Of a stretch of DNA of 64,000 nucleotides, positions 11,083 through 54,024 are shown piece after piece. Positions within the stretch are counted from its first letter, which is position 1; each line of letters begins with the position of its first letter. The position numbers and the translations under genes were made by a program. The DNA lies in the IMG/VR virus record IMGVR_UViG_3300044680_000280, positions 310,001-374,000 of that record; one strand, given 5' to 3'. The notes under the pieces were generated by a model. The model worked only from the letters and a program-made list of their open reading frames with translations. It did no database searches and had not been told where the DNA came from.

Positions 11083-11249
11083 ACGGGAGAACCGTTGGTG
11101 TGTGGATTGGTGCCATGCCTACCATTACGGTCCAGTACTTACCGGATACTCTTCCCCCGTCGATCTCCTCGGAGGAAGACTATACGATACGTAGGATAAA
11201 GTATGAACGGTGGGAGCACCTTCGAAGGAAGTGCGTGCTCGAGGGGTAA
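11079..11249 (+). CDS. hypothetical protein
   Basis: ATGA overlap. Confidence 0.5.
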   Translation: MNGRTVGVWIGAMPTITVQYLPDTLPPSISSEEDYTIRRIKYERWEHLRRKCVLEG

Positions 11250-11761
11250 GCGTCGATGTGCTGCCCGGTGTTGGGGGTATGGTCATCAGCGGATCGGAGC
11301 AGATTCTGAAGTGGTTTCAACTTCCCGGGGGCGTCTTCGAGCAACTCAACTTGAAACTCGTGGAGGAAACGACTTACACGGAAGGGGAGTCGAAAGATGG
11401 CGAGGGCGCAAGTCAGACGTCCGGTGTATGTATGCCCCCTATGGGAACGGAAAAAGGTGACGACGTCGCAGAGCGGTTGGGTAAGGCGTTCGGACGATTG
11501 GAGCAGTGGGACTTACGGGTTCGGGACGTGTGGCTCCATCCGAAGCAGATTGCTGAGCTCAAGGGGTCAAAGGCGTACGATCCCGTGGCGGACCGGCAAC
11601 TGCGGGACTTCTTCATCAAGTTGAGGGGCGCCTCCTACGTTGGCATGATTTATGGTGCCCGTGTCTTCGAGTCCGATGCCGTGCTGGAGGACCACGTCGT
11701 GCTGGCCCCCGACGGGCTTGATGCGAAGATTGAAGGTTCTGCCGCCTGTATGCCGTTCTGA
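11210..11761 (+). CDS. protein with C-terminal half resembling an HK97-fold major capsid protein segment (start may be 11279)
   Basis: AFGRLEQWDLRVRDVWLHPKQIAEL...IYGARVFESDAV pattern, recognised from memory of large-phage MCPs. Confidence 0.45.
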   Translation: MGAPSKEVRARGVSVDVLPGVGGMVISGSEQILKWFQLPGGVFEQLNLKLVEETTYTEGESKDGEGASQTSGVCMPPMGTEKGDDVAERLGKAFGRLEQWDLRVRDVWLHPKQIAELKGSKAYDPVADRQLRDFFIKLRGASYVGMIYGARVFESDAVLEDHVVLAPDGLDAKIEGSAACMPF

Positions 11762-11796
11762 TCGGTGTAAGGACAAGGTTGGAGGGTTTATTCCCC

Positions 11797-12087
11797 ATGA
11801 CCGAGATCGAACGACTCGAGATTCAACGACTGACGGCGGAGATTCGACGTGCGAGCGAGATCAACACTCTCACGTTGCTCGTCCAGAGCAAGATGAGGCT
11901 CACGAACATCTTTTGCTCCGAAGCCACGTGCGGGAAGGTGGCGACGTTGTCCATCGAAGGTGGGGAAGACAGCATCTATTCCATGTGGATCCAATGCGAC
12001 AACCACGGGCGGGACAGAAAGGGCGCTCGGGAATTCGAGTTCGCTAAGTTCTGTCGTCGGCTCAACACTTTGATCAGTGGGGAGTGA
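11797..12087 (+). CDS. hypothetical protein
   Basis: A-motif at 11763; Cys cluster. Confidence 0.6.
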   Translation: MTEIERLEIQRLTAEIRRASEINTLTLLVQSKMRLTNIFCSEATCGKVATLSIEGGEDSIYSMWIQCDNHGRDRKGAREFEFAKFCRRLNTLISGE

Positions 12088-12142
12088 TGGAACCTTGCCA
12101 GTGTGGGCGGGTAGAGCCGTGGATCACTGTTTTACTGGGACC

Positions 12143-12436
12143 ATGAAGCATCACGACTGGGTGCAAGAGACCCCACATCAGCCGTTGCATTTCCCCGAAA
12201 ACAAGCAATGGGTATGCCACGGTTGCGGAACTCGCATTATCTCTGTGGCTAGGCCCCAGGTCCTTGAGGATGACGCGGTCTGCTACACCGCGCGGCGAGT
12301 TGACACGGTCACTGGTGACGTTGTCTTGGAATTCTTCGGAAAGAAGTCATTACCTTACATTGTGACAGACTGCAATCTTCAGGGGCTTCACTTACTCTAC
12401 TTCGGTCTCATGGCGACCTGGGTCGCGAAATCCTGA
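12143..12436 (+). CDS. hypothetical Zn-binding protein
   Basis: HDW...WVCHGCG. Confidence 0.55.
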   Translation: MKHHDWVQETPHQPLHFPENKQWVCHGCGTRIISVARPQVLEDDAVCYTARRVDTVTGDVVLEFFGKKSLPYIVTDCNLQGLHLLYFGLMATWVAKS

Positions 12437-12717
12437 GCCTCTTCATCCGCAATCCTAGCGAGGACCTCCCCGTGACACGGTAGCGGGGCACACCAACACC
12501 CGAGGATCTTGCCCTTGAGCTCGTTCTTGACCCTCAGGACCATGTTGGGTTGAGCCAGAAGCCACTCCTCGTAGCGTCTGATCGCTTCCGTTCGAGAGGA
12601 GACTCGGAACTCGGCGAGGGTATCTTTCTTGTGGCTGAACGGGTTTCCCCAGGGTGACGGACGCCCGATGTAGACGTCGTAACGCCTCTTCTTGCAGTGG
12701 ACGACAGAGGTGGTCAT
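12397..12717 (-). CDS. DUF4326-family protein
   Basis: VVHCKK..YDVYIGRPSPWGNPF and LGCWCAPLPCHGEVL signature. Confidence 0.9.
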   Translation of the reverse strand: MTTSVVHCKKRRYDVYIGRPSPWGNPFSHKKDTLAEFRVSSRTEAIRRYEEWLLAQPNMVLRVKNELKGKILGCWCAPLPCHGEVLARIADEEAQDFATQVAMRPK

Positions 12718-12735
12718 GATCCACCCTGCTCCTCG

Positions 12736-13182
12736 TCACTTTGCCGGGACATAACGGGTAGTTGTACGAGGCCCCCGAGCCATGATGCCGGCCAGGGACG
12801 GGGAGAGACAGCCCTTGTGGTCACCCGGATAGACGATCTCATCTCCCGTACGTTTCGGATCCGGTGTGGGGTGAGCTCTATACTCAAAGACTGCGGAGCA
12901 GATAGCCCATTTCAATACCTCTTGGCCCCATGACCCATCCTTCAACTGATTGGTATCCAACTTCGTACCATCCATGAAAACGTCGAATTCGGAGGCGAGG
13001 ACGCCTAGGCCCCAGGCCCAGACGCCGATTTCCCCGGGACGTGAGTGCACCACGGCCGCGTGGACTTCGATTCTAAGTCTCTCGGCGTCGACGCGGGCCA
13101 TCTTCGCGGTGCCCCGTCGAATGGCCTCCTCTATAGTGAGGCGTTCGTCTTTGGTCAACTTGTACGCGTGATGTGTATGCAT
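12736..13182 (-). CDS. hypothetical protein
   Basis: A-motif at 13192. Confidence 0.7.
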   Translation of the reverse strand: MHTHHAYKLTKDERLTIEEAIRRGTAKMARVDAERLRIEVHAAVVHSRPGEIGVWAWGLGVLASEFDVFMDGTKLDTNQLKDGSWGQEVLKWAICSAVFEYRAHPTPDPKRTGDEIVYPGDHKGCLSPSLAGIMARGPRTTTRYVPAK

Positions 13183-13185
13183 ACC

Positions 13186-13356
13186 TCAGGATACACCGAC
13201 TCTGTGGAGCCACATAGACACTGCGGCTCCGATGGCGATGATCGTCGCTGCACCCATGACCGCTGGAGCTGAAAAGGCTACTCCGACGGCCGCGAGCAAG
13301 GTCGAACCGACCGCGACGCTAAGCTCCGTAAGAGTGCGGGCTTCGTCTTTAGTCAT
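13186..13356 (-). CDS. small membrane protein (56 aa)
   Basis: GGAG SD; two hydrophobic segments; below the track cut-off. Confidence 0.6.
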   Translation of the reverse strand: MTKDEARTLTELSVAVGSTLLAAVGVAFSAPAVMGAATIIAIGAAVSMWLHRVGVS

Positions 13357-13597
13357 GGTGCTCTCCTTGGATGACCTTTGGACCGGGGAGACCCGGCTTC
13401 ATTCCGAAGAGCTTGGCGACTCTGTCCAAACAATTCCGGCACGATCCATGCTCGACCAGGTTGGCCATGATCTCACGAGCTTTCGTGTTCTCGTTCTGAA
13501 GACTTTCGATTTCGGCCAGTGCGGCCTCTAGAACCTCAAGTCGGTGTTTGTCCTCCACAATGGCGAACTGGAGGCGCTCTTTCGTAGCTTTGCTCAT
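13349..13597 (-). CDS. hypothetical coiled-coil protein
   Basis: A-motif at 13609. Confidence 0.7.
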   Translation of the reverse strand: MSKATKERLQFAIVEDKHRLEVLEAALAEIESLQNENTKAREIMANLVEHGSCRNCLDRVAKLFGMKPGLPGPKVIQGEHHD

Positions 13598-13645
13598 GTC
13601 CTATATACTACACCGGGTCCCCGCCCTCGGTGTAAAGATAGTCTC

Positions 13646-14569
13646 ATGCCGTTGGACGATGATGAGGTGCGGGTCCTAAATCTACGAATCCTGAATCTTG
13701 AGAACCATCTCGCGACGGTCAACGCGGTTCTTTCTCGTATGGCATTGCTTGAGACACCCTCGGTTGAGCCCCCAACCCCACCAGAGACCCCACCAGAGGT
13801 TGAATTCGATGAAACGGACCTCGCACGTATTTGGGTGGAGTGGGGTGAAGTTGAGGGCCGCATTGTTAACGACGGGCACCACCCCATTACTGAGCACTAT
13901 CCCGACAGTGCGTCCGGGTTCGAGTTGTACAGGGAAGAGTGGCTCGAACTACGAATGGGGTCTGAGGAATCGACATGGAACTCAGCTCAACAGAGCGCGG
14001 CTAGAGTTGTCAGGGCTATGCCGAATCCTTATGTGTTACAAGAGAGGGCTCAGGATGCATGGCATTCCATGTCCAGGTACATACAAGAAACGGGGCATCA
14101 TCCGTTTCTGTACGAGGGGAGAGAGTACGCTGATTCGGCGGCGGGGTTCGAGTTGTTCATTGACTATTGGGTAGAGAGATACGTGGGCTTGTGGGGTCGT
14201 GGGTCCTCAAGGTATGAGCTCCAAACCCGCATTGTGAATCGTATTGTCACCGCAACGCCGAACCCCTATTTGCTAAGGGCGCAGGGCCCGGGTCTTCGGG
14301 ATGAATTTCCAATACAGGCCATCGCATTGACCTCAGACTTCGAGGACGTGCCTCCAAACGTCGTCAAGGCCGAGTCAATACTATTGACTCCTGAGGAAGT
14401 GGCTAGACTCACAGGTTACCTCAAACCCTACGAAATGTCGGTCGGTCAGTTGGCCACCAACCTTTTGCGAGAATGGCTCACCACCCATCGAGAGTATGAA
14501 ATTGCAGCGGTGGATCAATCACCCAAGACCATTTGGGACCACATTATGGACGTCCCCACTGAGGGGTGA
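13646..14569 (+). CDS. repeat-domain protein (2 copies of HP..YPD..GFE..W..PNPY) with W-tag
   Basis: A-motif at 13628; C-terminus KTIWDHIMDVPTEG*. Confidence 0.8.
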   Translation: MPLDDDEVRVLNLRILNLENHLATVNAVLSRMALLETPSVEPPTPPETPPEVEFDETDLARIWVEWGEVEGRIVNDGHHPITEHYPDSASGFELYREEWLELRMGSEESTWNSAQQSAARVVRAMPNPYVLQERAQDAWHSMSRYIQETGHHPFLYEGREYADSAAGFELFIDYWVERYVGLWGRGSSRYELQTRIVNRIVTATPNPYLLRAQGPGLRDEFPIQAIALTSDFEDVPPNVVKAESILLTPEEVARLTGYLKPYEMSVGQLATNLLREWLTTHREYEIAAVDQSPKTIWDHIMDVPTEG

Positions 14570-14898
14570 CTGGGATGGCAAAAGCACGAGGCATGATTGT
14601 CTACCGGGGATCGAGCACCAACCTGCTCGATACGGACAGATTCTACGCAAATTCAGACCCCACAATGGGGTACCGAATTGTGAACCCAGGTTACACACGG
14701 AACGGGGAGACGATAGAGGTCGAAGCTGAACAGGACGGGGAACACGGGAATCGCCCTTCAGGTGAGACCCTCACCTTTCTCTTCATTTCTACCCATTCCG
14801 TTGTGAACATCGTCGGTGGTGCCGATCTGATTCCTATTCCCATCGAACTTAACGGACCTCGGAAGACAATATGGGAACATTTGGTGGGTGAAGGGTGA
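14566..14898 (+). CDS. hypothetical protein with W-tag
   Basis: C-terminus RKTIWEHLVGEG*. Confidence 0.75.
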   Translation: MTGMAKARGMIVYRGSSTNLLDTDRFYANSDPTMGYRIVNPGYTRNGETIEVEAEQDGEHGNRPSGETLTFLFISTHSVVNIVGGADLIPIPIELNGPRKTIWEHLVGEG

Positions 14899-14919
14899 AA
14901 AGTGGTGTAAAATCGGGGA

Positions 14920-15255
14920 ATGCCTCCCTCTGAGAACCACTCAGAATGTGATGCTCGCATCGAGGCACTCCACTCAGAATGTGATGCTCGCATCGTGACA
15001 CTCCAGTTGGAAGTGCGGCGGCTCGATACACGGCTTATTTGGCTCAATACACGGCTCGTAACTCTAGAGGCAACGGTTGAGGAACGGAATGATGAACCGG
15101 AGACGACCTTAGCTTCCGAGGACGGATCACCCCCGTTCCGTGTGCCCAGTCTCTGGTCCTCGGATATCGTGGTATCCCATATATTCGAAGAACATAAGGA
15201 CGACGGTTCACCTAGGGTCTCAGCTTGGGATCACATAATGAGTGAGGACGCTTGA
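14920..15255 (+). CDS. coiled-coil protein with W-tag
   Basis: TGGTGTA at 14903; C-terminus RVSAWDHIMSEDA*. Confidence 0.75.
   Translation: MPPSENHSECDARIEALHSECDARIVTLQLEVRRLDTRLIWLNTRLVTLEATVEERNDEPETTLASEDGSPPFRVPSLWSSDIVVSHIFEEHKDDGSPRVSAWDHIMSEDA
14937..14995 (+). repeat. 26-bp direct repeat, period 33 (HSECDARI x2)
   Basis: ccactcagaatgtgatgctcgcatcg at 14937 and 14970. Confidence 0.9.
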
Positions 15256-15257
15256 CC

Positions 15258-16523
15258 ATGCCCGACGAAGTCACCACCCGAATTGAAGCGCTCGATAGAC
15301 GGATCTCCGACATCGAATCCCTTTACGGTAACCTCAGGGTGGTCAACTTTGAGAGCCAGGTTCGAGCTGCGTGGGCTCCCATTGAGGAGCAGATCCAATC
15401 GAGCGGACGTCACCCTCTCGAGTTCAACGGTTCTACCTACCCCGACACAAGTAGTGGATTTGAGAGGTTCCGTATCGACTGGATCTACGGCATCGTTGCT
15501 GTTGCTGAGACATCCCCACTGTACAACATCAGACTTCAAATTGCGTCTCTAGTGGTGATGTCAGTTCCCAACCCCTACATGTCACTAATCAATGTAGGAA
15601 ATCCAGACATTAATATGGGCTCCGGGGAGTGGGTACAGGTAGGAACCACTCGGTTTGCTGCTGCATACGAGAGTGCGATTCGAAGCTTATGGGGCAGGGC
15701 GATACCGCAAGAGTACGCGAGAGATTGGGTGGGATTTGAGTCTTTTCGTCAGGATTGGGTGACTCTACAGTTGCAGGATTACCCAACGACGAGTCCCGGA
15801 TACGCCGCTAGGGAGCCTATTATTAGGCGAGTGGTGGACGAGACGCCGAATCCGTATCCACGTATGGACAACCCTCAACGGGACATTCCCACTGCGACGA
15901 CTCTTGTCGATCTCGTACAGGCGGGCTCGTCGGCTGATGTAAGGGTCATCGCATTCATAGGTCGGGTTCGAGCTGCATGGGGGGAATCCGCTGCCTTCAT
16001 TGCGAGTAACGGTAGTCACCCCTTGCGTCCCATCTTTGGCATCTATGGTGAATCCGAAGAAGAGTACAATCGTTTCGTCGAGGATTGGATCAGCACTTTT
16101 ATCAGCGAAGATGTGACTGAGGATGAGCCGGACGACACCTATAAAACGATACTCGCGAATGGCGTCGTGTCTGAGACCCTTAACCCCTTTCGAACTCGTC
16201 GGCTTCACGCCTCGGTAGCCGGTGGTTCGATCGCGCCTACCGGCGGAACAGTTACGAATCAAATCGCCGACGATACGGTCGGATACGACATCGCTCTTCA
16301 GGAGTTCTTCATCCGGTTGCCGAATGTCACGCATTCCCAGATGCTTGAGTTTCAGAACGAAGTCTCTCACGTCGTACCCACCCGGGCGGGGGACGCTGTC
16401 GTTGCCTATATGAGGCGCACGGTAGGGGGTTTTTTCGGGACCGTAAAGCGAGATCCCTCGCCCGTTGAAAAAATTGAACCCAAGGTCTCCATTTGGGACC
16501 ATTTAATGGAAGGAGACCGGTAA
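15258..16523 (+). CDS. repeat-domain protein (3 copies) with W-tag
   Basis: Three ...GFE.F..DW...VV...PNP[YF] units; C-terminus KVSIWDHLMEGDR*. Confidence 0.8.
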   Translation: MPDEVTTRIEALDRRISDIESLYGNLRVVNFESQVRAAWAPIEEQIQSSGRHPLEFNGSTYPDTSSGFERFRIDWIYGIVAVAETSPLYNIRLQIASLVVMSVPNPYMSLINVGNPDINMGSGEWVQVGTTRFAAAYESAIRSLWGRAIPQEYARDWVGFESFRQDWVTLQLQDYPTTSPGYAAREPIIRRVVDETPNPYPRMDNPQRDIPTATTLVDLVQAGSSADVRVIAFIGRVRAAWGESAAFIASNGSHPLRPIFGIYGESEEEYNRFVEDWISTFISEDVTEDEPDDTYKTILANGVVSETLNPFRTRRLHASVAGGSIAPTGGTVTNQIADDTVGYDIALQEFFIRLPNVTHSQMLEFQNEVSHVVPTRAGDAVVAYMRRTVGGFFGTVKRDPSPVEKIEPKVSIWDHLMEGDR

Positions 16524-16539
16524 TGAAAGATATGAGGCG

Positions 16540-17028
16540 TCACACATGCCAAAGGAGAGAACGTGGCGCCACGGTGCAGATTCCCTTGGAGGCGGTCACT
16601 AGAGCCGCCTCCTCCCGTGGGTCTAAAGAGACCGTCACCGCGTACTTGGGGTTGCCCGAGATGATCTTAATAGATGGCACATAACGCCGCAGACTCGTAA
16701 TAATGTCCACTTCTCTGCCCGCCGCTGACTCCCGTAGAAGCTCGGGAAGCAGCGTCAAGGTTCTCTCGAGCAGGATTCCTCCCAGTGCCTTTATGGATTG
16801 TTCGAGTGTCACTACCGATGGCAGACGTTCCAGGCTCGAGGTCCGCTGCCAAGCCACGTCGTCTAGTACCTTTGTGGCCGCCAAGACGATCTGGTAGAGA
16901 TCGAGCAGGTCCCTCGCCCTAATGCAGGGCTCATGATTGCATTCCTCAAAAGAACATTTGTGACCCATACCCTCATGGTGGTCTTTACGGTCCTGAGCAC
17001 TTGCTACTGCGTTCACAAAACTACCCAT
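16540..17028 (-). CDS. hypothetical protein
   Basis: Operon ORF, GAAGG upstream. Confidence 0.6.
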   Translation of the reverse strand: MGSFVNAVASAQDRKDHHEGMGHKCSFEECNHEPCIRARDLLDLYQIVLAATKVLDDVAWQRTSSLERLPSVVTLEQSIKALGGILLERTLTLLPELLRESAAGREVDIITSLRRYVPSIKIISGNPKYAVTVSLDPREEAALVTASKGICTVAPRSLLWHV

Positions 17029-17269
17029 TGTCTTGCCCTTCCTCTTCCAGCATGTGTTCAAAGACTGTTTTGGAATTAACCGGTTTTACGGGAATTTCTT
17101 GTGGTTGAGGAACGACTACGGGCTGCTCTGGCACCACCGCTCGTCGGGCTCTCCATCGGTTCCAAAGGGAACCAAAGAGGTTGTTGCGCACCGCGGTGGA
17201 TAGAGCGGCAAAGAACATGCTCACCGCGGTGTATGCCCCAACCTCCATAATGGTGTCGCGCGGTGTCAT
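17021..17269 (-). CDS. small membrane protein with W-tag variant
   Basis: Hydrophobic N-terminus; KTVFEHMLEEEG near the C-terminus. Confidence 0.7.
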   Translation of the reverse strand: MTPRDTIMEVGAYTAVSMFFAALSTAVRNNLFGSLWNRWRARRAVVPEQPVVVPQPQEIPVKPVNSKTVFEHMLEEEGQDNG

Positions 17270-17727
17270 GTCACTTCTCTCGCAGTGGCCTGTAGACCCG
17301 AACAATGCTGCCCTCGTATCCGCGTTCTAACCAGTCAGCTAACAGACGAAGTGCTCGTGACCTACTGACGAACTGCGGCTTCTTTGGGGAAGCAACGTAC
17401 CGTCCGTCGTCTTGCACGTACCATCCGTCTGACGTCTTGACGCGGTACCCTACGTACGTACGAATCCTTTTGCGGACCTTACGGATGGCATCATCCCAAT
17501 CATCGGCATTCAGAAGCCCCCTCTCGTCGAGCACTCTCCTCACGGTGAAGTTTAGTATGTTCTGCATGCACCCCCCTTTTTCAAATGGGGGTAACAGGAT
17601 GATAGTGCCCGTTCCTTCATGCCAATAAAATACATGTGCATGAATAGTCTGTTTCGGGGTGAACCCTAGACTCTTCAGCAGGCCGGAGATAAGTCTTGAG
17701 TCGTACAGCATGTCACTTCTCTCGCAG
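17267..17727. repeat. 19-bp direct repeat flanking gene 17271-17711
   Basis: catgtcacttctctcgcag at 17267-17285 and 17709-17727. Confidence 0.9.
17271..17711 (-). CDS. HicA-like N-terminal domain fused to a second small domain
   Basis: LLKSLGF...HAHVFYWH...LPP resembles HicA; C-terminal part similar to 25601-25891. Confidence 0.5.
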   Translation of the reverse strand: MLYDSRLISGLLKSLGFTPKQTIHAHVFYWHEGTGTIILLPPFEKGGCMQNILNFTVRRVLDERGLLNADDWDDAIRKVRKRIRTYVGYRVKTSDGWYVQDDGRYVASPKKPQFVSRSRALRLLADWLERGYEGSIVRVYRPLREK

Positions 17728-18531: not shown

Positions 18532-18546
18532 TTTGTGTCCTTTTCA

Positions 18547-19280: not shown

Positions 19281-19296
19281 GGACTAGGACTTTTTA

Positions 19297-46524: not shown

Positions 46525-46559
46525 GTTCCTCTCACGTCTCTTCGGTGTAGCTACTCAGA

Positions 46560-47090: not shown

Positions 47091-48043
47091 ACATGGCCGA
47101 ACTAGAGTTACGGTTGCGCCGCCAATTTTCCATCGACGCTGGGGAAGCCCTTGTCGACTACATGAACGCCACCGTGGTGAGTAAACTTCAAGCGCTCAAT
47201 GTCATCTGTCGGCACAGCATCTGTCCGCCCGGGGCTTGCGGCCCCTGTTACGACGATAGAGAGTGGCAGGATGAAGTCGCACGAGCCTCTTACGGTAACT
47301 TCTGTCCCCAATGTGGGGCAAAAATGCCCGGTCAGCACGAACTGTCCTGCATGTATGTGTTACCGGCCGATGAGTGTGTTGACGCACTGGTCGATGAGGG
47401 CGTTAACGTGCCCACGCCACCTTCTTCCGAGTCTGAAGATTCGCGCGACCACCTCATCGACGATCTCAGTCGCCAACTCACCGAAATGACCGAACGTTAC
47501 TCGATGGCAATGGGGCCCGGTTCATCGTTTGCCGTCGTCAACCACTTTGAGCGGGCTAAAGAGCTCCTCGGCGCCGGTCAGGAATTCATCGACGAAGCCG
47601 TCGAACGGGTTCTCAAGGCTCGACAAGAACGGGAAGCTGCCCTCGAAGCCGAACTCGCTGAGGCAAAGAAGGACCGCGACACCCTACGAGACCGTGCGGT
47701 CGAAGCTCTACAGCAAAGGGATCGAGCCCGGGATGAAACGGACGCTATTCGAAAGGAGCTGAACGCCCTTAAAGACCAGGGACCATTTGTGCGTTCCGTC
47801 AAAAAATCGCCCAAATCTGACACGTACCGCGTCCCCCGAGCAAAGTGCATCACGTGTGATACGGAATTGAGTTTCCGCCAACACCTTCCCGCCGTACCCG
47901 AGTCTCCTGAAGACCCACCCGGGCCGGCTTTCAATGTTTTCGTTCACACCGACCCCTGTTCGCAAGGATGGGTGTGTCCAGCCGGGGGAAAGATCATCGG
48001 GGCGAATGGATTGGTGCGTTTAAACGAAGCGCCGATGCCCTAG
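47087..48043 (+). CDS. coiled-coil protein with Zn-finger motifs
   Basis: ATGA overlap; CPQCG, CITC. Confidence 0.7.
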   Translation: MNMAELELRLRRQFSIDAGEALVDYMNATVVSKLQALNVICRHSICPPGACGPCYDDREWQDEVARASYGNFCPQCGAKMPGQHELSCMYVLPADECVDALVDEGVNVPTPPSSESEDSRDHLIDDLSRQLTEMTERYSMAMGPGSSFAVVNHFERAKELLGAGQEFIDEAVERVLKARQEREAALEAELAEAKKDRDTLRDRAVEALQQRDRARDETDAIRKELNALKDQGPFVRSVKKSPKSDTYRVPRAKCITCDTELSFRQHLPAVPESPEDPPGPAFNVFVHTDPCSQGWVCPAGGKIIGANGLVRLNEAPMP

Positions 48044-48297
48044 CCGTTCCATGTTGTCCGCTTTAGCCATTGCTCGCGCTGCCAATCGGGACCCGTGGTG
48101 ACGGTAGCTTGGCGATCCCGTAGAGTCTTCTCCCCAAGAGCGGCGACCTCGAGCTTGTCCGCAATGCGATCTAGCTCGATGGCGGCCTGCCTAGGATTGA
48201 ACCCTAAGGGCTTGGTCAAAAGGCGGTGTCTCAGGCTGTCAAGTTCCCGAAGAACCGTGTTCACGTCCGTCACTTTGAAATTCTGCTGAAAAGGCAT
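48040..48297 (-). CDS. hypothetical protein
   Basis: GAGGG upstream of ATG 48297. Confidence 0.55.
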   Translation of the reverse strand: MPFQQNFKVTDVNTVLRELDSLRHRLLTKPLGFNPRQAAIELDRIADKLEVAALGEKTLRDRQATVTTGPDWQREQWLKRTTWNG

Positions 48298-48333
48298 AGC
48301 GCGACCCTCATTCGTCCGGTGTACTACTGTAGG

Positions 48334-48549
48334 ATGAGAGTTCTCTGGTGCTCGTGCCAATGGCAGGTACAACTTTTCAGTAGGGTGTGGACAATTCGTA
48401 GCCCTCTCTGTCAGGCTCACGGGTGGAAGTCCCTTCACCGCTGGCACCGACTGGGGCCCAAGAAGCGGTCTGTCCTGGCTCCAAAGAGCATCCTTCGGAG
48501 CCTCGGAACGGAGCGTCTCAAAAAGGCATTGGATCCGACGAAGCCCTGA
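48334..48549 (+). CDS. small Trp/Arg-rich basic protein
   Basis: A-motif at 48317. Confidence 0.6.
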   Translation: MRVLWCSCQWQVQLFSRVWTIRSPLCQAHGWKSLHRWHRLGPKKRSVLAPKSILRSLGTERLKKALDPTKP

Positions 48550-49030
48550 CCCGGAGGCGAACCTCGTTTGCCTCTTTCAGCGAAAAAAGCCTCAGATCGG
48601 TGATGTTCTGTGGGCGTTCGGTCGCCAAACGCGACACGAACGCCCGTACCGCCATCCCGATCTTTTTGTCCTGCTCCTCGAGTGACGGATCCAAGTGCAC
48701 CCACGGGCCGTCGAACAGGTAAACATGCCCAAAGATTTTGGGCGGCTCATCCGAATTCCACGCACGGTACTCGACGAAAGCGTCCGGCTCCTTACCGCGG
48801 CAATACTCCTCTTGGGCTTCCGTCAGAATCCGTTCGGTCTCCTCCTCGGTGTCCATGTAGTTACGCCAAGCGCCCGTGAGGATCGACTGGATCTCTCCGT
48901 CAACGTAACGGACGAGTTGGTCTCGGTTGGGTCCGTTCCACTGTCGTCCGCCGTTAGCCACGTTGCCGATCCCAGCGGCGAGGTAGTTCGTGATGGCGAC
49001 AACGATCTGGTCGATTTTTTTGGGTTCCAT
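48518..49030 (-). CDS. hypothetical protein
   Basis: A-motif at 49041. Confidence 0.7.
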   Translation of the reverse strand: MEPKKIDQIVVAITNYLAAGIGNVANGGRQWNGPNRDQLVRYVDGEIQSILTGAWRNYMDTEEETERILTEAQEEYCRGKEPDAFVEYRAWNSDEPPKIFGHVYLFDGPWVHLDPSLEEQDKKIGMAVRAFVSRLATERPQNITDLRLFSLKEANEVRLRVRASSDPMPF

Positions 49031-49074
49031 TTGACCATAGTACACCGGTCGTGAGTGGTGTAATCCTAGAAGGT

Positions 49075-49392
49075 ATGGCTTACGATGCGGACACCGTCAC
49101 GGCTCAGGTGGCTCCTCAGTTGGACCGTCTGTTCGCCCCCTGGCGGGTAGGTCGACCCGATGGGTGGATTCCCGACCCACGAACGAAGGAACTCGTCTGC
49201 ATCGGTCTGTGGCTCCGTGAGGAACTCACCCGTCTAGGACTATCCGATACGGACCGTAAGACGCAGGAAGGCTACTATCATCGGCACAGCCGTAGCGACG
49301 AGAACCTTTACGAGCTTGCTGCCAAGGTTCTCAATGATGCGGTCGCTGGGGATATTCCTCAGAATCGCAAACCTCATCGACGGTGGGGCTGA
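49075..49392 (+). CDS. hypothetical protein
   Basis: TGGTGTA at 49056. Confidence 0.7.
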   Translation: MAYDADTVTAQVAPQLDRLFAPWRVGRPDGWIPDPRTKELVCIGLWLREELTRLGLSDTDRKTQEGYYHRHSRSDENLYELAAKVLNDAVAGDIPQNRKPHRRWG

Positions 49393-49394
49393 CC

Positions 49395-49607
49395 TCAGTC
49401 CTTGTCGTTGATGCGATAGAGGTTGATGTAGACGTTGTCCTTCCACGAGATCACGGCGCAAGGATCGAGTTGAATCGAGATTCCTTGCTCGTCTTCCCAA
49501 GCCGCACCGATTCGGTGAAAACGTTTCGCTTCTTTATCCCCTTTGTCTCCCGTCGGCTTGACCTTTACGGTCATGATGTAGTCCGGTTTTCTCGACGCGT
49601 TTGCCAT
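49395..49607 (-). CDS. small conserved protein, ssDNA-binding-like beta fold
   Basis: RIGAAW...GISIQLD; B-promoter at 49637. Confidence 0.65.
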   Translation of the reverse strand: MANASRKPDYIMTVKVKPTGDKGDKEAKRFHRIGAAWEDEQGISIQLDPCAVISWKDNVYINLYRINDKD

Positions 49608-49788
49608 GAGTCGAATACAACGCAGGTAGTCGAAAGGTTCAAGAGTACGTGGCTAGGAGATTTTGCACAGGAGCTTGTTGGCTCCGTACAAGCCAGAGTA
49701 GGTCTGTCTCGGCGTACCGAGCATTCGTTTGAAGTGTAAGGTCGATGCTTACACGAGCACTTCCCCGCCACACCCCGCGCAACGTTTG

Positions 49789-50094
49789 TCAGGCATCCGG
49801 ATTAGATACCTCAGACTTGAGTTTCGTCAAGAGTCGCTCGATTCCGAGGGCGATGTTGTCGTAAATGGGGCGCCTCATCGCTGGGTGCGGGGCGGTCCGA
49901 CCGTTTTTCCAACGTTCGAAACTCGACACGCTCAAACCGAACCGTACTCTGAGGACCTTCTCCTCGTCAAATACCCTCAGTTCTACCATCCGGTTGATAA
50001 GTTCTCGAAAAGTATCAGAGCTGTGCGTGGGGGCCGCCTTCAGATCCTCCATGAGTTTCGTGAGTTCTGCGATACGGTTGGACACGGTAAACAT
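49789..50094 (-). CDS. XRE-like helix-turn-helix protein
   Basis: FGLSVSSFERWKNGRTAPHPAMR. Confidence 0.7.
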   Translation of the reverse strand: MFTVSNRIAELTKLMEDLKAAPTHSSDTFRELINRMVELRVFDEEKVLRVRFGLSVSSFERWKNGRTAPHPAMRRPIYDNIALGIERLLTKLKSEVSNPDA

Positions 50095-50151
50095 TCTACT
50101 ACACCAAGATTCTCGATGAGTCAAGACCTCAGCCGGTGTAACCTGGGAACT

Positions 50152-50886
50152 ATGGGCAACCCGCAAGACCGCATCATTTTCGCTTTGGACCTTCCCACCT
50201 ACAAGGAAGCCGCCGGTTACGTTTCCGCTCTGCGGGAACACGTCGGCTGCTTCAAGGTGGGGCTCGAGCTTTTTATGGTTGATGGCCCTTTAATGGTTCA
50301 CCATATTCAACACGTACACAAAAGGTCGGTCATGCTCGACCTGAAGTTTCACGATATCCCTGAAACCGTTGCGCGAGCCCTCGTCCAGGCGGGGGATATG
50401 GGCGTGCGGTTCGCCACGATTCACGTGCAGCAAAGAGCAACGATGAAGAAGGCTGTCACGGTGGCAAAGCAGTACGGCATCCAACTCCTCGCCGTGACAG
50501 TTCTGACGTCGATGACGGACGATGACCTTTTCGACCTGGATATGTCGCCGCCGTTCCTTGGTTTTTTCCCCGGTGGAGTATCGAACCGTGTCGAACGTCT
50601 GGCAAAGCTTGCCTGGTCGGAGGGTGTCACGGGCTTCGTTTGCTCTCCCATGGAGGTGAAGCGGCTCCGTAACAGTTTGCCCAATGCTGTCCTCGTGACC
50701 CCAGGAGTGCGTCCCGCGGGTAGTGATGTCGGAGACCAAAAACGAATCGGGACGCCGTCTCAAGCTATTTCTGACGGAGCAAACTACATCGTCGTAGGTC
50801 GTCCGATTCGAGATGCCGCCGATCCTGTCGCCGCCGCGGCTCTGATCGCAAAAGAGATCGACTTCGACTTGGTGGACTCCCCTTGA
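50152..50886 (+). CDS. pyrF: orotidine 5'-phosphate decarboxylase
   Basis: IIFALD, FKVGLELF, MLDLKFHDIPETV, VTPGVRP and YIVVGRPI signatures; A-motif at 50134. Confidence 0.95.
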   Translation: MGNPQDRIIFALDLPTYKEAAGYVSALREHVGCFKVGLELFMVDGPLMVHHIQHVHKRSVMLDLKFHDIPETVARALVQAGDMGVRFATIHVQQRATMKKAVTVAKQYGIQLLAVTVLTSMTDDDLFDLDMSPPFLGFFPGGVSNRVERLAKLAWSEGVTGFVCSPMEVKRLRNSLPNAVLVTPGVRPAGSDVGDQKRIGTPSQAISDGANYIVVGRPIRDAADPVAAAALIAKEIDFDLVDSP

Positions 50887-50920
50887 CGTGTTCCCCGGAC
50901 GGGGTAGGATTCGAGCCACC

Positions 50921-51031
50921 ATGAAACAAGAAAGCTCCGAAACCGTTCTAAACATCGTCATTACGACCGCCCTTCTCGCCCTCGGGGTGGCGTTCATCAT
51001 CGGTTCTTACCAAGGGTGGCTCACGCAGTAA
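50921..51031 (+). CDS. 36-aa membrane peptide
   Basis: TTGACG-N16-TAGGAT upstream; single TM. Confidence 0.6.
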   Translation: MKQESSETVLNIVITTALLALGVAFIIGSYQGWLTQ

Positions 51032-51084
51032 GGTTGAACCGACCGCCCTTCCGTGTTGTACTCCCGTTAAAGGACGAGCGAACC

Positions 51085-51429
51085 GTGGCGAACAAGATCA
51101 AATGGGCGTGCCCCAGGTGCGGCGCTCCGGCAAACGAACACGGTAAGGGTGGTCACGACACATGCCACTCTCATAAGCGCGGTGCGGATCCCAACAACGC
51201 ATGCATGGGGTTCATCTGCGATTGCGACTGGGAGACCGGACCTGAGCACGGAGAATCCTACCAGGATCCGTGCGAGGAAGCTTACTGCTACCATTGCGGA
51301 TGGGGTGGCACGTTTCCCGAGAAGCCGAAGGGTCTCCAGTCGTGGGAAAAGAAAGCCCTTGATGCAGGGTGGACGATGCCCGAAGCTCGTATGGCAGAAC
51401 TCGGGCTCGCCACGGAAAAGAAGAAGTAA
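51085..51429 (+). CDS. Cys/His-rich Zn-binding protein
   Basis: B-promoter at 51034; CPRCG, CDC, CYHCG. Confidence 0.7.
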   Translation: MANKIKWACPRCGAPANEHGKGGHDTCHSHKRGADPNNACMGFICDCDWETGPEHGESYQDPCEEAYCYHCGWGGTFPEKPKGLQSWEKKALDAGWTMPEARMAELGLATEKKK

Positions 51430-51433
51430 CCCC

Positions 51434-51721
51434 ATGTCCGTCTTTGTCACGAAAGGCATGCGAATTCGAGCCAAGTGGTTCGAGGCTCGCCTGGAGTCCC
51501 TCTCTGGAGGAGTGCCCAAGGTCGGAGCCGTCGAAAAGGTGGTGACGGGCGTCGTCCGTCACGTTCGTGGAGATCATCCGACGGATCCGAAGACGGTTCG
51601 GGTCTACGTGGAGTCGGAGGACGGACTTGGCGTTCCGTGTGGCCGCTGTCAGGTTCGCGAGATGGAGATTCACCCAGAACACATCGTCGAGGTACTCAAT
51701 TCCCGGACTGTCGTCGGCTAA
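51434..51721 (+). CDS. hypothetical protein
   Basis: VRHVRGDHPTDP; CGRC. Confidence 0.65.
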   Translation: MSVFVTKGMRIRAKWFEARLESLSGGVPKVGAVEKVVTGVVRHVRGDHPTDPKTVRVYVESEDGLGVPCGRCQVREMEIHPEHIVEVLNSRTVVG

Positions 51722-51778
51722 GTACCCGCCAAACGAACGCGGCGCCGAGGATCGCTCCGATGATTGTCGCTGCTTTGA

Positions 51779-52312
51779 TCATGGTCCTACCACCTTCGTC
51801 CCGCACCAGTAGCAGTTCTTTCCGATGTCGTTTTTCCGTTGACAGCTAGAGTTCGGACAAAGAGCCTCCTTCGGGGCTCCTGTCGTTGCTGTCGAGTCGC
51901 CAGCCTGAACGGTGAGTTGCCACCAATTGTAGAAGTCGAATCGTTCGATCTGCGTTGTGCCGACGGGCTCTACTTCAATGGTCGGTTCCCCCAGCCGATT
52001 ACCTAAGGTCACTAAGTGCCTACGAAAGGTGAACTTCTGACCTTGTGACCAAATCCTTGACCCCGTGCTCACTACGATGGTGTCCCCATCCTTGATGGGT
52101 GTGAGGTCCTTCTCGTGAAAGGTGTGCATGGACGTGTTCGTTGGATCCACACTGAACCGTATAGACCATAGTCCCGACGGGGGAGTACCTCCGATCTGGT
52201 CGTACACGACTCCAAGCCAGGACGAGGTTGGTACCCGGACGGGATCCCCTATTTTGGGGACGTAAGAAGCAGCGGCTACGGGATACATCCCGCCAAACGG
52301 GTACCCGAACAA
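51779..52312 (-). CDS. SH3-like protein with conserved C-terminal Zn-ribbon tail
   Basis: KIGDPVRV...; CPNSSCQRKNDIGKNCYWCG. Confidence 0.75.
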   Translation of the reverse strand: MFGYPFGGMYPVAAASYVPKIGDPVRVPTSSWLGVVYDQIGGTPPSGLWSIRFSVDPTNTSMHTFHEKDLTPIKDGDTIVVSTGSRIWSQGQKFTFRRHLVTLGNRLGEPTIEVEPVGTTQIERFDFYNWWQLTVQAGDSTATTGAPKEALCPNSSCQRKNDIGKNCYWCGTKVVGP

Positions 52313-52313
52313 C

Positions 52314-52562
52314 TCAGCCCTCTTTGGTCTTCAGTTTCGAAGCGTTGTCGTCGAGGAAGCCGCGAATCTCGTCGGCCATGTCGAGCACCTTCTCCCACTG
52401 CTCCTTGTAGAGCGTGACGGGGAAGCGCCCGAGGCCGTAGAGCGAGACGCCGCCCTTCTCGGAAACCTTGAGGCTGATTGCTCGCTTCGGTTGAGCCTTG
52501 AGCTTCTCGTTCTCAGCTCGGAGTCGATTGAGTTCGGCTTGGACTTCGGGATCGAGGGTCAT
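52314..52562 (-). CDS. conserved small hypothetical protein
   Basis: LKVSEKGGVSLYGLGRFPVTLYKEQW motif; A-motif at 52573. Confidence 0.85.
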   Translation of the reverse strand: MTLDPEVQAELNRLRAENEKLKAQPKRAISLKVSEKGGVSLYGLGRFPVTLYKEQWEKVLDMADEIRGFLDDNASKLKTKEG

Positions 52563-52627
52563 GCCTTTTTATTACACCGTTTTTTTACACTCGCCGCAGG
52601 TTTTTGGCTCGGTGTACGCTATTGGGT

Positions 52628-53119
52628 ATGCCGGAGTGGCTTTCTAGCCTGCTCAGATTATTCACCGATAATGGGGTCAGGAACGGGATCGTCTCGGATC
52701 TAGCCAGTCGGTGGGGCGTTCTGTCTGACGAACAGTGGGTGAGACTGGACTACCGAGTCCGGTCGGTTTGCATCCGTGAAGCGGTGAGTCACACGAACGG
52801 TATTACGATTCTCGCTGTTTGTGAGACCGCGGCAACTCTATGTGACCGTAGAGGTCGAGGTGAGCCCGTCACTGATGCCGAATGGTTGGACGCCCGCCGC
52901 AAGGCGTCGGCGGTGACAGGGAGTCCGGCGGTGGTGGCGTTGGCGTCGACGTTGGCAGCATCGAATTCGATGCCATGTGCATGGTTGGCGGCGAGTTCGG
53001 CATCGTCGTTGACCCGCATTGCCCAAGCCACCTACGACCTCATCGACCAAGAAATCGATTTGACGCGAGCCGCCAGACCCAAAGCCATGACGATCTGGGA
53101 GCACATAATGGAGAATTGA
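52628..53119 (+). CDS. paralog of 6179-6691 with W-tag
   Basis: A-motif at 52610; MTIWEHIMEN*. Confidence 0.8.
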   Translation: MPEWLSSLLRLFTDNGVRNGIVSDLASRWGVLSDEQWVRLDYRVRSVCIREAVSHTNGITILAVCETAATLCDRRGRGEPVTDAEWLDARRKASAVTGSPAVVALASTLAASNSMPCAWLAASSASSLTRIAQATYDLIDQEIDLTRAARPKAMTIWEHIMEN

Positions 53120-53141
53120 CCCTAGAACCTGCGGTCGCAGT

Positions 53142-53366
53142 CTAGAAGCAGTCCTCGTTGCTGTACTCGATGCTGTCGGTTCCCATATCGTCGGCGGAGA
53201 CGGGGGCGCGCCTTGAGGTGTGGCGAACGTGGGCCGCGGCGGGGGGTGCCGCCTCGCAAACCGCGTGACGGACGGGGTTGCCCTTCACCCATTCGATTTT
53301 TTCGCCGACACGGACGCGGCGGTTGCAGACCTTGCAGAACGAAGCGAACTTTGCTGTGAGGACCAT
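53142..53366 (-). CDS. small Zn-binding protein
   Basis: AKFASFCKVC..GEKIEW..HAVC. Confidence 0.65.
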   Translation of the reverse strand: MVLTAKFASFCKVCNRRVRVGEKIEWVKGNPVRHAVCEAAPPAAAHVRHTSRRAPVSADDMGTDSIEYSNEDCF

Positions 53367-53451
53367 TTTTCTGTTCTCCCTCTCACTCATATAGAACGGA
53401 CCGTTCCGGAGGAACTTGAGAAAAATTCGGCGTTGCGGTGTAAGGGACCGC

Positions 53452-54024
53452 ATGCTCTCGGATCAAACGAAGGAAGCCATTCTCACCGAGTATCTCAAAA
53501 ATGGTGGGCGTCACCAAAAGCCGCCTGAGACCTCATTTGGACCGAAAACTGGGTTCCGTTGTACGTGCGGCGGCCCCCTTTACCAAAGGTACGACCTCTT
53601 CGAGTCGCGACTTCCCCCGCGCAAAGGTCCTCGTCGTAGCAAAAACCGTCGGATCGCCAAAAAGCAACTCAAGAGGTGGCTCGAGGAAGAATGCATGCTT
53701 TATCGGTTCGAGTTCGCGTTGAACCTTCTACGAGGCCCCCGCGGGTATATCTGCGGCTCTTGTTACAGAAACGTTGGATTTTACGAGGCCATCGGCCGCA
53801 ACACCTTCATTGTTGAGCAACTCCCGGACGGCGCTCTGCCGATTTACGACCGAGATCCTGATGTTACGGCGTTCGATCCCGCCTCAGGACAAGCTCTTAC
53901 GGTAGAGAACGTCCTCCCCGGCTCCCAAACCGTAGAGGTCCTCGATCGTTTGGATCCGATACCCCTCCCCAAAGAGGAAGGTACGGATCTCCAGGTTCCC
54001 AACCTTGGCGTCGACGAGGACTGA
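53452..54024 (+). CDS. Zn-finger protein carrying a segment resembling a major capsid protein N-terminal region
   Basis: A-motif at 53436; IGRNTFIVEQLPDGALPIYDRDPDV. Confidence 0.55.
   Translation: MLSDQTKEAILTEYLKNGGRHQKPPETSFGPKTGFRCTCGGPLYQRYDLFESRLPPRKGPRRSKNRRIAKKQLKRWLEEECMLYRFEFALNLLRGPRGYICGSCYRNVGFYEAIGRNTFIVEQLPDGALPIYDRDPDVTAFDPASGQALTVENVLPGSQTVEVLDRLDPIPLPKEEGTDLQVPNLGVDED

What the first reader, a model, noticed from the sequence alone, without database searches (positions are those of the whole stretch)
11210..54024. Two separate small genes appear to carry N- and C-terminal fragments of a major capsid protein
53452-54024 contains IGRNTFIVEQLPDGALPIYDRDPDVTAF. 11210-11761 contains AFGRLEQWDLRVRDVWLHPKQIAEL...IYGARVFESDAV. 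From memory, these match the N-terminal (GRKTFLVEQLPDGALPIYDKDPDV) and C-terminal (AFAQIERHDLRV..IFMN...LWGAQI) parts of HK97-fold MCPs of uncultured large phages; this is not verified here. Each fragment is fused to an unrelated domain. Inference: capsid-derived decoys against MCP-sensing defences (CapRel and Lit are established MCP-sensing systems), assembly modulators, or superinfection blockers.
Basis: inference. Interest (0 to 1): 0.65.

Follow-up and report, generated by a model that had tools for sequence, protein, structure and literature searches.

The report
Capsid-protein pieces reused as separate genes
A ~400-kb peat-soil jumbo phage carries two small, conserved accessory genes built from pieces of its own major capsid protein: a free-standing axial (A) domain, and the N-terminal arm interrupted by a zinc-ribbon-like insert. 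They may mimic capsid surfaces that host immune sensors or assembly partners recognise, but this function is untested.

Summary
The window lies in a 406.7-kb phage genome whose own major capsid protein (MCP, 293 aa, outside the window) belongs to the Bacillus phage G gp27 type (PDB 6wkk, E=4e-85).

Gene 53452-54024 (190 aa) copies the MCP N-terminus. Its N-helix block gives E=2e-4. The MCP family's most conserved block is 81% identical (E=3e-15; profile-profile E=3e-14). A 4-Cys, Arg/Lys-rich insert splits the two blocks. Differences from the MCP gene fall mostly at third codon positions, so it is an old copy under purifying selection.

Gene 11279-11761 (160 aa; ORF from 11210) ends in a ~100-aa domain from a diversified family (56 clusters). 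This family is homologous to the MCP A-domain: hhalign 98.4%, E=5e-15; the sole PDB sequence hit is phage G gp27, E=8e-10. A confident model (pLDDT 89) matches almost only HK97 capsid proteins. It is a free-standing A-domain rather than a simple C-terminal fragment.

Both families are sporadic accessory genes, absent from the closest complete relatives. Function is untested. My best guess (0.35) is that they are non-assembling MCP mimics that titrate MCP-binding factors, most plausibly host sensors such as Avs7/8/10, which bind the A-domain. An assembly role, superinfection exclusion and unrelated exaptation remain open.

The parts
11279..11761 (+). P0001 gene as most likely expressed (160 aa, ATG preceded by a GGGGG RBS-like run). 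The mechanical ORF starts at GTG 11210 (183 aa).
   Evidence: ORF list. Sequence upstream of the ATG. The public gene call for the identical protein is 160 aa (P0004). In-frame codon-usage score is 0.38 for 11279-11431 against -0.69 and -0.38 in the other frames.
11279..11458 (+). N-terminal extension of P0001 (about 60 aa, acidic and low-complexity in its second half). It is not conserved in the family.
   Evidence: Coding signal is in frame. Most family members lack any extension, and the extensions that exist in other members are unrelated. No Pfam or PHROG hit.
11459..11758 (+). Free-standing HK97 A (axial) domain, homologous to MCP residues ~165-239, followed by a short linker and a terminal strand ending in the conserved C-x-P-[FL] C-terminus.
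   Evidence: hhalign 98.4%, E=5e-15. Sole PDB sequence hit is phage G gp27 157-232, E=8e-10. AlphaFold model pLDDT 89, pTM 0.78. In the exhaustive structural search the top 11 of 48,161 chains are all HK97 capsid proteins or encapsulins, Z 5.4-7.3, aligned through to the chain end. BFVD and Atlas neighbours are MCPs.
53452..54024 (+). P0002 gene (190 aa; ATG with an AAGGGA RBS 5 nt upstream).
   Evidence: ORF list and sequence. The TTG-to-ATG leader scores as non-coding (-0.72). Homologs start at the equivalent Met.
53455..53544 (+). Copy of the MCP N-terminal helix region (MCP residues 5-34).
   Evidence: BLASTP 33% identity, E=2e-4, collinear with the main block. Homolog P0010 begins ISNETKEAIL against MCP VSNETKQAII. 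Modelled as a helix (low confidence).
53545..53781 (+). Insert absent from MCPs: four invariant Cys (CxC ... CxxC, zinc-ribbon-like) bracketing an invariant Arg/Lys-rich helix (GPRRS.NRRI.KKQ..W).
   Evidence: Family alignment, invariant columns C37, C39, C101, C104 and the basic run. No Pfam family matches. Model shows short strands plus a long helix, pLDDT 66 overall. Zinc or nucleic-acid binding is inference only.
53782..53874 (+). Copy of the most conserved MCP block (MCP 41-71: Y..(G)R..F.VEQLPDGALPIYD.DP.VTAF).
   Evidence: 81% amino-acid identity, E=3e-15. hhalign E=2.7e-14. 79.6% nucleotide identity with 12 of 19 differences at third codon positions, 9 synonymous and 6 non-synonymous codon changes. 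MCP-family invariant residues 54-63, 65 and 66 are all retained.
53875..54021 (+). Acidic C-terminal tail unique to this member. It overlaps the 3' end of the convergent GNAT acetyltransferase gene (53884-54366, minus strand) by 141 nt.
   Evidence: Homologs end ~10 residues after the MCP block. Overlap seen in the ORF list. GNAT: Pfam PF00583 E=5.5e-9. Both frames score as coding.

Best explanation
SHOWN: both genes are real, conserved accessory genes exapted from the phage's own phage-G-type HK97 major capsid protein. P0001 ends in a complete, independently folding A (axial) domain. P0002 is the MCP N-terminal arm (N-helix plus the family's most conserved block), split by a Cys4/basic insert. 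Neither has the parts needed to build a capsomer: no spine helix or P-domain, and no complete E-loop.

INFERRED MECHANISM: they act as non-assembling mimics of MCP surfaces and compete with monomeric MCP for proteins that recognise those surfaces. The most likely target is host immune sensors of MCP monomers. For the A-domain protein this would be Avs7/Avs8/Avs10-type STAND sensors, which bind the capsomer-forming face of the A-domain. The mimic would occupy the sensor, or mask the MCP, without allowing full activation. P0002 retains exactly the residues that are invariant in MCPs while lacking the rest of the fold. This implies it contacts the same partner surface as the MCP segment does. Its basic zinc-ribbon-like insert may add nucleic-acid binding.
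For: MCP derivation.

Real genes under selection: P0002 has homologs at 43-48% identity that keep the 4 Cys, the basic run and the MCP block, and substitutions against the MCP gene fall mostly at third positions. The P0001 domain family has 56 clusters at 50% identity with conserved length and a conserved C-terminus.

Accessory rather than core: no stand-alone copy of either family in LR745208.1 (485 kb, MCP 83% identical), Tunturi_5 or phage G, nor in five MAG bins holding related MCPs. Both genes sit among small hypothetical genes away from the head module. Sporadic, rapidly diversifying small genes are typical of counter-defence loci (established knowledge).

Against: No binding, expression or phenotype data exist. 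The MCP+P0002 complex job gave no verdict. No RNA runs hold this phage.

For sensors that are activated by binding (Avs, CapRel, Lit), a mimic could trigger the sensor instead of blocking it.

The host and its defence repertoire are unknown.

The motifs the A-domain family shares with the MCP (DLRV, LWGA.V..S..VP) look like fold-core determinants, so they do not show that the capsomer-forming face is preserved.

The P0002 model is poor (pLDDT 66), and its MCP block is disordered when modelled alone.
Confidence: 0.35

Rival explanations
1. Capsid-assembly accessory or modulator. The MCP-like pieces dock onto MCP, the scaffold or the prohead protease through native MCP interfaces. This would either target the proteins into the prohead (P0002 as an internal, DNA-binding head protein) or tune capsomer formation in the very large capsid.
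For: P0002 keeps the invariant MCP residues, which argues for the same contact partner as in the MCP. In one 68-kb relative the P0002-like gene lies ~8 kb from the MCP gene. The basic Cys4 insert suits nucleic-acid binding (inference). In scaffold-dependent HK97-fold phages the MCP N-arm contacts the scaffold (established knowledge, e.g. 80alpha, PDB 6b0x listed).
Against: Both families are missing from the closest complete relatives that have the same MCP type, so they cannot be essential for this capsid architecture. Neither gene is in the head module of this genome. The complex job gave no verdict.
Confidence: 0.25
2. Exaptation for a function unrelated to capsids. The A-domain would be reused as a generic small alpha/beta scaffold, as is proposed for archaeal Family 4 'A-domain encapsulins'. 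P0002 would be a zinc-ribbon nucleic-acid-binding regulator that merely inherited MCP-derived flanks.
For: Stand-alone A-domain proteins exist outside viruses, paired with enzymes (PMC8346489). The model matches 2pk8 at Z=5.4. Small uncharacterised proteins with this fold are scattered over many phages. The A-domain family has diverged far from the MCP: no full-length MCP appears among its 56 hits.
Against: This does not explain why P0002 holds the MCP block at 81% identity under purifying selection. No conserved enzyme neighbour is seen in five other members' contexts or in the window itself.
Confidence: 0.2
3. Superinfection exclusion or inter-phage competition. The fragments would act as dominant-negative poisons of capsid assembly for co-infecting relatives that use the same MCP type.
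For: Truncated subunits that keep one interface are classic dominant negatives (established knowledge). The distribution is accessory and sporadic.
Against: The P0002 block is as close to its own MCP as to foreign MCPs (81% to P0003, P0011, P0012 and P0014), so it would poison self-assembly too unless it is separated in time. No timing data exist.
Confidence: 0.12
4. Non-functional debris of MCP gene duplications or illegitimate recombination in a very large genome.
For: A third MCP-piece ORF in this genome (94 aa, genome 217,872-218,156) is an orphan with no homologs. Tunturi_5 carries yet another piece. So fragment generation is evidently frequent in this lineage.
Against: Both window genes belong to conserved families with intact frames, conserved lengths and invariant residues. 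Synonymous changes are in excess. The codon-usage signal is clear.
Confidence: 0.05

Closest known systems
Bacillus phage G gp27-type HK97-fold major capsid protein (PDB 6wkk; phrog_2522; weakly PF05065)
   Same: Source of both pieces. P0001's domain is homologous to the gp27 A-domain (E=8e-10; Z=5.1). P0002 carries MCP residues 5-34 and 41-71.
   Different: Neither protein has the complete fold. P0001 lacks the N-arm, E-loop, spine helix and P-domain strands. P0002 lacks everything after the start of the E-loop and has a Cys4/basic insert. Neither can be a shell-forming subunit.
Family 4 'A-domain encapsulins' (DUF1884 / PF08967; structure 2PK8, PF0899 of Pyrococcus furiosus)
   Same: Proteins of about 100 aa consisting only of the HK97 A-domain (PMC8346489). 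The structural match is Z=5.4, rmsd 3.1 over 76 of 94 residues. Their function is also unknown.
   Different: No PF08967 hit in any of the 52 members scanned. The P0001 family is phage-encoded, not archaeal or thermophile-encoded. It has no upstream enzyme partner. In sequence it is specifically related to the phage-G-type MCP.
Full-length MCP paralogs used as special capsid subunits (e.g. T4 gp24 vertex protein, PDB 1yue)
   Same: A duplicated capsid-protein gene kept in the same genome. 1yue is among the structural matches (Z=6.2).
   Different: Those are complete HK97-fold subunits that occupy lattice positions. The genes here are single sub-domains.
Phage triggers and evasion of MCP-sensing immunity
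   Same: These sensors recognise MCP monomers, and Avs7/8/10 recognise specifically the capsomer-forming face of the A-domain (PMC13581612). That is the domain P0001 presents in isolation.
   Different: The papers I found and read describe no phage-encoded MCP-fragment decoy; PMC13728456, a counter-defence review returned, was not opened. Binding to any sensor is untested, and the host is unknown.

Membership tests
HK97-fold major capsid protein (phage G gp27 type) | Significant sequence homology to the family | tested here: met
   P0001 domain: hhalign E=5e-15, HMM against PDB E=8e-10. P0002: BLASTP E=3e-15, hhalign E=2.7e-14.
HK97-fold major capsid protein (phage G gp27 type) | Complete fold: N-arm, E-loop, P-domain with spine helix, and A-domain in one ~280-300-aa chain | tested here: not met
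   P0001 aligns only to MCP ~165-239 plus the terminal strand. P0002 aligns only to MCP 5-34 and 41-71. PHROG and Pfam capsid models do not match either protein. They are derivatives, not members.
Family 4 A-domain encapsulins (DUF1884 / PF08967) | A ~100-aa protein consisting only of the HK97 A-domain fold | tested here: met
   Model pLDDT 89. Matches the A-domain to C-terminal part of MCPs, and matches 2pk8 at Z=5.4. Most family members are 95-130 aa.
Family 4 A-domain encapsulins (DUF1884 / PF08967) | Match to the Pfam PF08967 model | tested here: not met
   None of 52 family members hits PF08967 at E<=0.1.
Family 4 A-domain encapsulins (DUF1884 / PF08967) | Two-gene operon downstream of an enzyme (hydrogenase, OsmC, GAPDH, DeoC); thermophilic archaea or Bacteroidetes | tested here: not met
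   The context is phage, with small hypothetical genes as neighbours. Found in peat/soil metagenomes. No relative in 185,579 species genomes with the pattern used.
Anti-defence decoy or sponge against MCP-sensing immunity | Binds the sensor (or masks the MCP) and suppresses MCP-triggered defence | not testable with these tools
   Host and sensor are unknown. The only support is the literature finding that Avs7/8/10 bind the A-domain and the accessory distribution.
Zinc-ribbon proteins (P0002 insert) | Two Cys pairs positioned to chelate zinc; match to a known zinc-ribbon model | tested here: inconclusive
   CxC and CxxC are invariant in 5 of 5 homologs. No Pfam model matches. The fold model is of low confidence.
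Virion or prohead structural component | Located in the head module, or present in virion proteomes | tested here: not met
   Location criterion only. The genes lie 155 and 197 kb from the head module, among accessory genes. Proteomics is not available, and the cultured relatives lack the genes.

The most novel reading that the evidence does not exclude
Jumbo phages of the phage-G capsid lineage encode 'self-mimic' decoys: isolated pieces of their own major capsid protein. One is a free A-domain presenting the capsomer-forming face. The other is the conserved N-arm block on a zinc-ribbon scaffold. These would bind or blind host pattern-recognition receptors that sense MCP monomers (Avs7/8/10-type, CapRel-type). 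It would be a new counter-defence principle. The same viral free A-domain genes could also be the evolutionary source of the archaeal Family 4 'A-domain encapsulins'.
Probability: 0.2. Interest if true: 0.85.

Novelty: new variant of a known kind. Interest (0 to 1): 0.6.

Why it matters
Stand-alone HK97 A-domain proteins were known only as an enigmatic archaeal/Bacteroidetes family (Family 4 encapsulins). This work shows a diversified, unannotated, phage-encoded family (at least 56 clusters at 50% identity) that is demonstrably derived from a specific capsid lineage. Alongside it is a second family that reuses the MCP N-arm.

This shows that very large phages recycle sub-domains of their capsid protein into separate, selected accessory genes. 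It provides viral candidates for the origin of A-domain encapsulins.

Several bacterial immune receptors have now been shown to bind exactly the A-domain of MCP monomers. That makes a directly testable hypothesis: that these genes are capsid-mimic counter-defence proteins. If they instead prove to be assembly factors, they would bear on how T~52-class giant capsids are built from a small 290-aa subunit.

Tried and rejected
- **Pfam and PHROGs on both proteins:** nothing useful. Pfam on all family members gave only scattered chance hits.
- **Pairwise BLAST of P0001 against the MCP:** not significant (E=2.1). A single-sequence tblastn of the P0001 domain against 50,697 phage records found no match. 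Only profiles and structure reveal the relationship.
- **Complex prediction, MCP + P0002(1-150):** no verdict (score 0.06 against a mark of 0.32). It is not evidence either way.
- **P0002 structure prediction:** low confidence (pLDDT 66, pTM 0.37), so no fold search was run on it.
- **Foldseek against PDB with the P0001 model:** no hit at E<=1e-3, although the list is dominated by HK97 MCPs. The exhaustive aligner and BFVD were needed.
- **IMG/VR scans:** Only one locus was found for the P0002 family.
- **GTDB genome scan for the A-domain family:** nothing. The MCP scan returned MAG bins of many unrelated phyla, most likely mis-binned phage contigs, so no host was inferred.
- **Expression:** no RNA run holds the phage. 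Contigs laid on 52500-55500 (3,001 letters, within the operators' limit) were identical, so there was no variation to analyse.
- **Promoter and terminator scans:** no more sites than chance.
- **Neighbour annotation:** uninformative apart from a GNAT gene.
- **Literature:** in the papers found and read, no description of phage-encoded MCP-fragment decoys or phage A-domain proteins. One hit, a 2026 review of phage counter-defence (PMC13728456), was not opened. The primary phage G capsid paper is not in the library.
- **Split MCP idea rejected:** the two genes are not halves of one disrupted second MCP gene. They lie 42 kb apart, each belongs to its own conserved small-protein family, and together they still lack the spine helix and P-domain.
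- **Genetic code:** no alternative code was used or needed.

Full report
**What the window is.** The window is bases 310,001-374,000 of a single 406,734-bp contig with 55% GC. IMG/VR lists the contig as a virus record that is about 85% complete. An identical copy of one of its proteins also sits on a 463.5-kb contig. The phage is found in peat and soil metagenomes from several studies. The window contains many small genes on both strands and no tRNAs.

**The genome's own major capsid protein.** The head module lies outside the window at about 158-172 kb. It holds a prohead protease (phrog_18299), a Q-rich candidate scaffold, a 206-aa protein in the position where phage G has its decoration protein, and a 293-aa major head protein, P0003 (phrog_2522 E=3e-51; PF05065 below threshold). 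The P0003 family matches PDB 6wkk at E=3.6e-85. That entry is titled 'Phage G gp27 major capsid proteins and gp26 decoration proteins'. gp27 is the phage G MCP (bioRxiv 10.1101/2024.12.16.628780; annotation). The nearest deposited relatives by MCP are the uncultured 485-kb phage LR745208.1 (83% identity), Tunturiibacter phage Tunturi_5 (309 kb, 47%) and phage G (38%).

**Checking the observation.** Both ORFs and both quoted peptides are present at the stated coordinates. The 'remembered' MCP motifs are nearly verbatim those of P0003.

**P0002 (window 53452-54024, 190 aa).**
- *Start codon.* The start is the ATG at 53452, which has an AAGGGA RBS. The TTG-to-ATG leader scores as non-coding, and homologs start at the equivalent position.
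- *Match to the MCP.* Residues 123-153 (numbered from the TTG) match MCP 41-71 at 81% identity, E=3e-15. Residues 14-43 match MCP 5-34, E=2e-4, collinearly. Family against family, hhalign gives 98.3% probability and E=2.7e-14, with 74% identity over 34 columns. The copied block is the most conserved stretch of the MCP family: residues 54-63, 65 and 66 are invariant there, and all are retained in P0002.
- *The insert.* Between the two MCP-derived blocks lies a ~79-aa insert that MCPs lack. It has four invariant cysteines (CxC...CxxC) bracketing an invariant Arg/Lys-rich stretch.
- *Conservation.* Four homologs at 43-48% identity (125-154 aa), from different metagenomes, share this whole architecture. 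One more was found in IMG/VR.
- *Age of the copy.* At the DNA level the block is 79.6% identical to the MCP gene. Twelve of the 19 differences are at third codon positions (9 synonymous and 6 non-synonymous codon changes). So this is an old copy whose peptide is maintained by selection.
- *The tail.* The last ~48 residues are unique to this member. They overlap the convergent GNAT gene by 141 nt.
- *Structure.* The AlphaFold model is poor (pLDDT 66), and the MCP block is not ordered when modelled alone.

**P0001 (window 11210/11279-11761).**
- *Sequence evidence.* Pairwise BLAST to the MCP is not significant (E=2.1). However, the C-terminal ~100 residues belong to a family. An exhaustive profile search found 56 representative clusters at 50% identity. 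Forty-four are 38-132 aa, mostly about 100 aa. Twelve are longer (142-358 aa): ten carry the domain at or near the C-terminus, and two (P0044, P0079) have it near the N-terminus with a C-terminal extension. None is a full-length MCP (alignment).
- *Homology to the MCP.* This family's profile aligns to the MCP family at 98.4% probability, E=5e-15, with P0001 87-166 against MCP 165-239 (with only three sequences the result was already 95.7%, E=1e-8). Against all PDB sequences it hits only phage G gp27, residues 157-232, E=8e-10. It finds the A-domain region of the MCP in ten records or bins carrying this MCP type. In the reverse direction, the MCP profile ranks the P0001 ORF third among 5,887 genome ORFs (E=2e-4).
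- *Structural evidence.* A confident model (pLDDT 89, pTM 0.78; three helices and six short strands) was aligned to 48,161 representative chains. The top 11 are all HK97 capsid proteins or encapsulins (Z 5.4-7.3), and about 48 of the top 50 are as well. They align from the A-domain to the chain end; gp27 aligns over 147-278 at Z=5.1. Foldseek against PDB, BFVD (four hits at E<=1e-3, including MCPs) and the ESM Atlas agree.
- *What it is.* P0001 is therefore not just a C-terminal fragment. It is an excised, complete A (axial) domain in which the P-domain excursion is replaced by a short linker before the terminal strand. That last point is inferred from the alignment ranges; no coordinates were inspected.
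- *The N-terminal extension.* The ~60-aa extension from ATG 11279 has a clear in-frame codon signal, but it is not conserved in the family.

**Distribution.** Neither family occurs as a stand-alone gene in LR745208.1, Tunturi_5 or phage G. Neither occurs in five MAG bins that hold related MCP contigs, although those bins are incomplete. The contexts of other members are arrays of small hypothetical phage genes, some on contigs of 0.1-1 Mb. Both families are therefore sporadic accessory genes, not core head genes.

**The lineage produces MCP pieces repeatedly.**
- A third ORF in this genome (94 aa) ends in an MCP 33-64-like motif. It has no homologs.
- P0016, from a 465-kb relative, embeds the MCP N-terminal module between unrelated parts.
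- Tunturi_5 gp172 carries MCP 86-114 behind a Tat-like signal.

**Comparison with what is known.** The only described stand-alone A-domain proteins are the 'Family 4 A-domain encapsulins' (DUF1884/PF08967, structure 2PK8). These are ~100 aa, found in thermophilic archaea and a few Bacteroidetes, sit downstream of enzymes, and have unknown function (PMC8346489). The P0001 model matches 2pk8 at Z=5.4. But none of the 52 members scanned hits PF08967, and the context and taxonomy differ. So P0001 works like that family in fold but is not a member of it. I found no precedent for the P0002 architecture.

**Mechanism.**
- *What is shown.* Both proteins derive from the MCP, are under selection, have an accessory distribution, and cannot form a full subunit.
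- *What is inferred.* They are non-assembling mimics of MCP surfaces that compete for MCP-binding factors.
- *Caveat.* A mimic might activate such sensors rather than block them, and nothing here tests binding.
- *Rivals.* An assembly or prohead-targeting role is weakened because the genes are dispensable in close relatives. Unrelated exaptation remains possible. Superinfection exclusion has the problem that the mimic would poison the phage's own assembly. Debris is disfavoured by the conservation. The single complex prediction (MCP + P0002) returned no verdict and is not used as evidence.

**Verdict.** This is a new variant of a known kind, namely exapted HK97 sub-domains. It is of moderate-to-high interest because it defines a sizeable unannotated phage family and gives a testable link to capsid-sensing immunity.

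Noticed in passing
Outside the window: G000:C1:217872-218156 (minus strand) = L002:3872-4156: A third MCP-piece ORF (94 aa). It has a Cys-rich N-part and a C-terminus ARKILLVDVLPDGTISTYDK resembling MCP 33-64 (E about 2e-4 to 7e-4). It has no homologs other than itself, so it may be a recent or non-functional fragment.
   Followed up: yes
P0016 (289 aa), e.g. L005:5001-5870; also on a 465,730-bp contig: A protein in a related huge phage embeds the whole MCP N-terminal module (its residues ~111-175, without a zinc-ribbon insert) between unrelated N- and C-terminal parts. It sits next to a DNA methylase and a thymidine kinase. This is a second, independent fusion type using the same MCP module.
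   Followed up: partly
Tunturiibacter phage Tunturi_5, PP885688.1:122430-122723 (gp172, XOB77615.1) = L020:1483-1776 (minus strand): A 97-aa 'hypothetical protein' in a cultured 309-kb relative carries MCP residues 86-114 (E-loop return strand and start of the spine helix; E=1.4e-6). These follow a twin-arginine-like signal sequence (TRRQFFRF...). It is an experimentally tractable example of an MCP-piece gene.
   Followed up: partly
window 53884-54024: The 3' end of the P0002 gene and the 3' end of the convergent GNAT acetyltransferase gene (53884-54366, minus strand; PF00583 E=5.5e-9) overlap by 141 nt. Both frames score as coding. The overlapped P0002 tail is absent from homologs, which suggests a lost stop codon that extended the gene.
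   Followed up: partly
window 52604-54366: Four consecutive small genes alternate in orientation (+, -, +, -). The 103-aa minus-strand ORF 53142-53453 abuts the P0002 start and has its own Cys pairs (CKVC...C). No promoter- or terminator-like sites occur beyond chance.
   Followed up: partly
whole genome G000: IMG/VR labels the 406.7-kb record a 'provirus' that is 85% complete. The identical P0004 and P0085 proteins also occur on a 463,523-bp contig, so the true genome may be about 460 kb. I did not examine the contig ends for host DNA.
   Followed up: no
L031-L041 (GTDB MAG contigs): MCPs 66-93% identical to this phage's MCP sit in MAG bins labelled Lysinibacter, Altiarchaeales, Legionellales, Kerfeldbacteria, Methylobacter, Nitrospirae, Verrucomicrobiota and others. 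These are most likely huge-phage contigs mis-binned into MAGs. They give no host information.
   Followed up: partly
BFVD and ESM Atlas hits to model me26e843c6d3a: Uncharacterised small proteins (76-155 aa) with an A-domain-like fold appear in many phages. Examples include uncultured Caudovirales proteins of 109 and 155 aa (E<1e-3), with weaker matches in Erwinia phage Y3, Pseudomonas phage PaBG and Haloferax tailed virus 1. Atlas clusters of 115 and 142 aa are also hit. Free A-domain-like proteins may be a widespread, unrecognised viral class.
   Followed up: no
L001:8005-8625 (minus strand) and L001:8720-10144 (minus strand), outside the window: Directly upstream of the MCP gene lie a 206-aa protein, in the position of phage G's gp26 decoration protein, and a 474-aa protein with long Gln-rich repeats, a likely scaffold. 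Neither has a Pfam or PHROG match.
   Followed up: no
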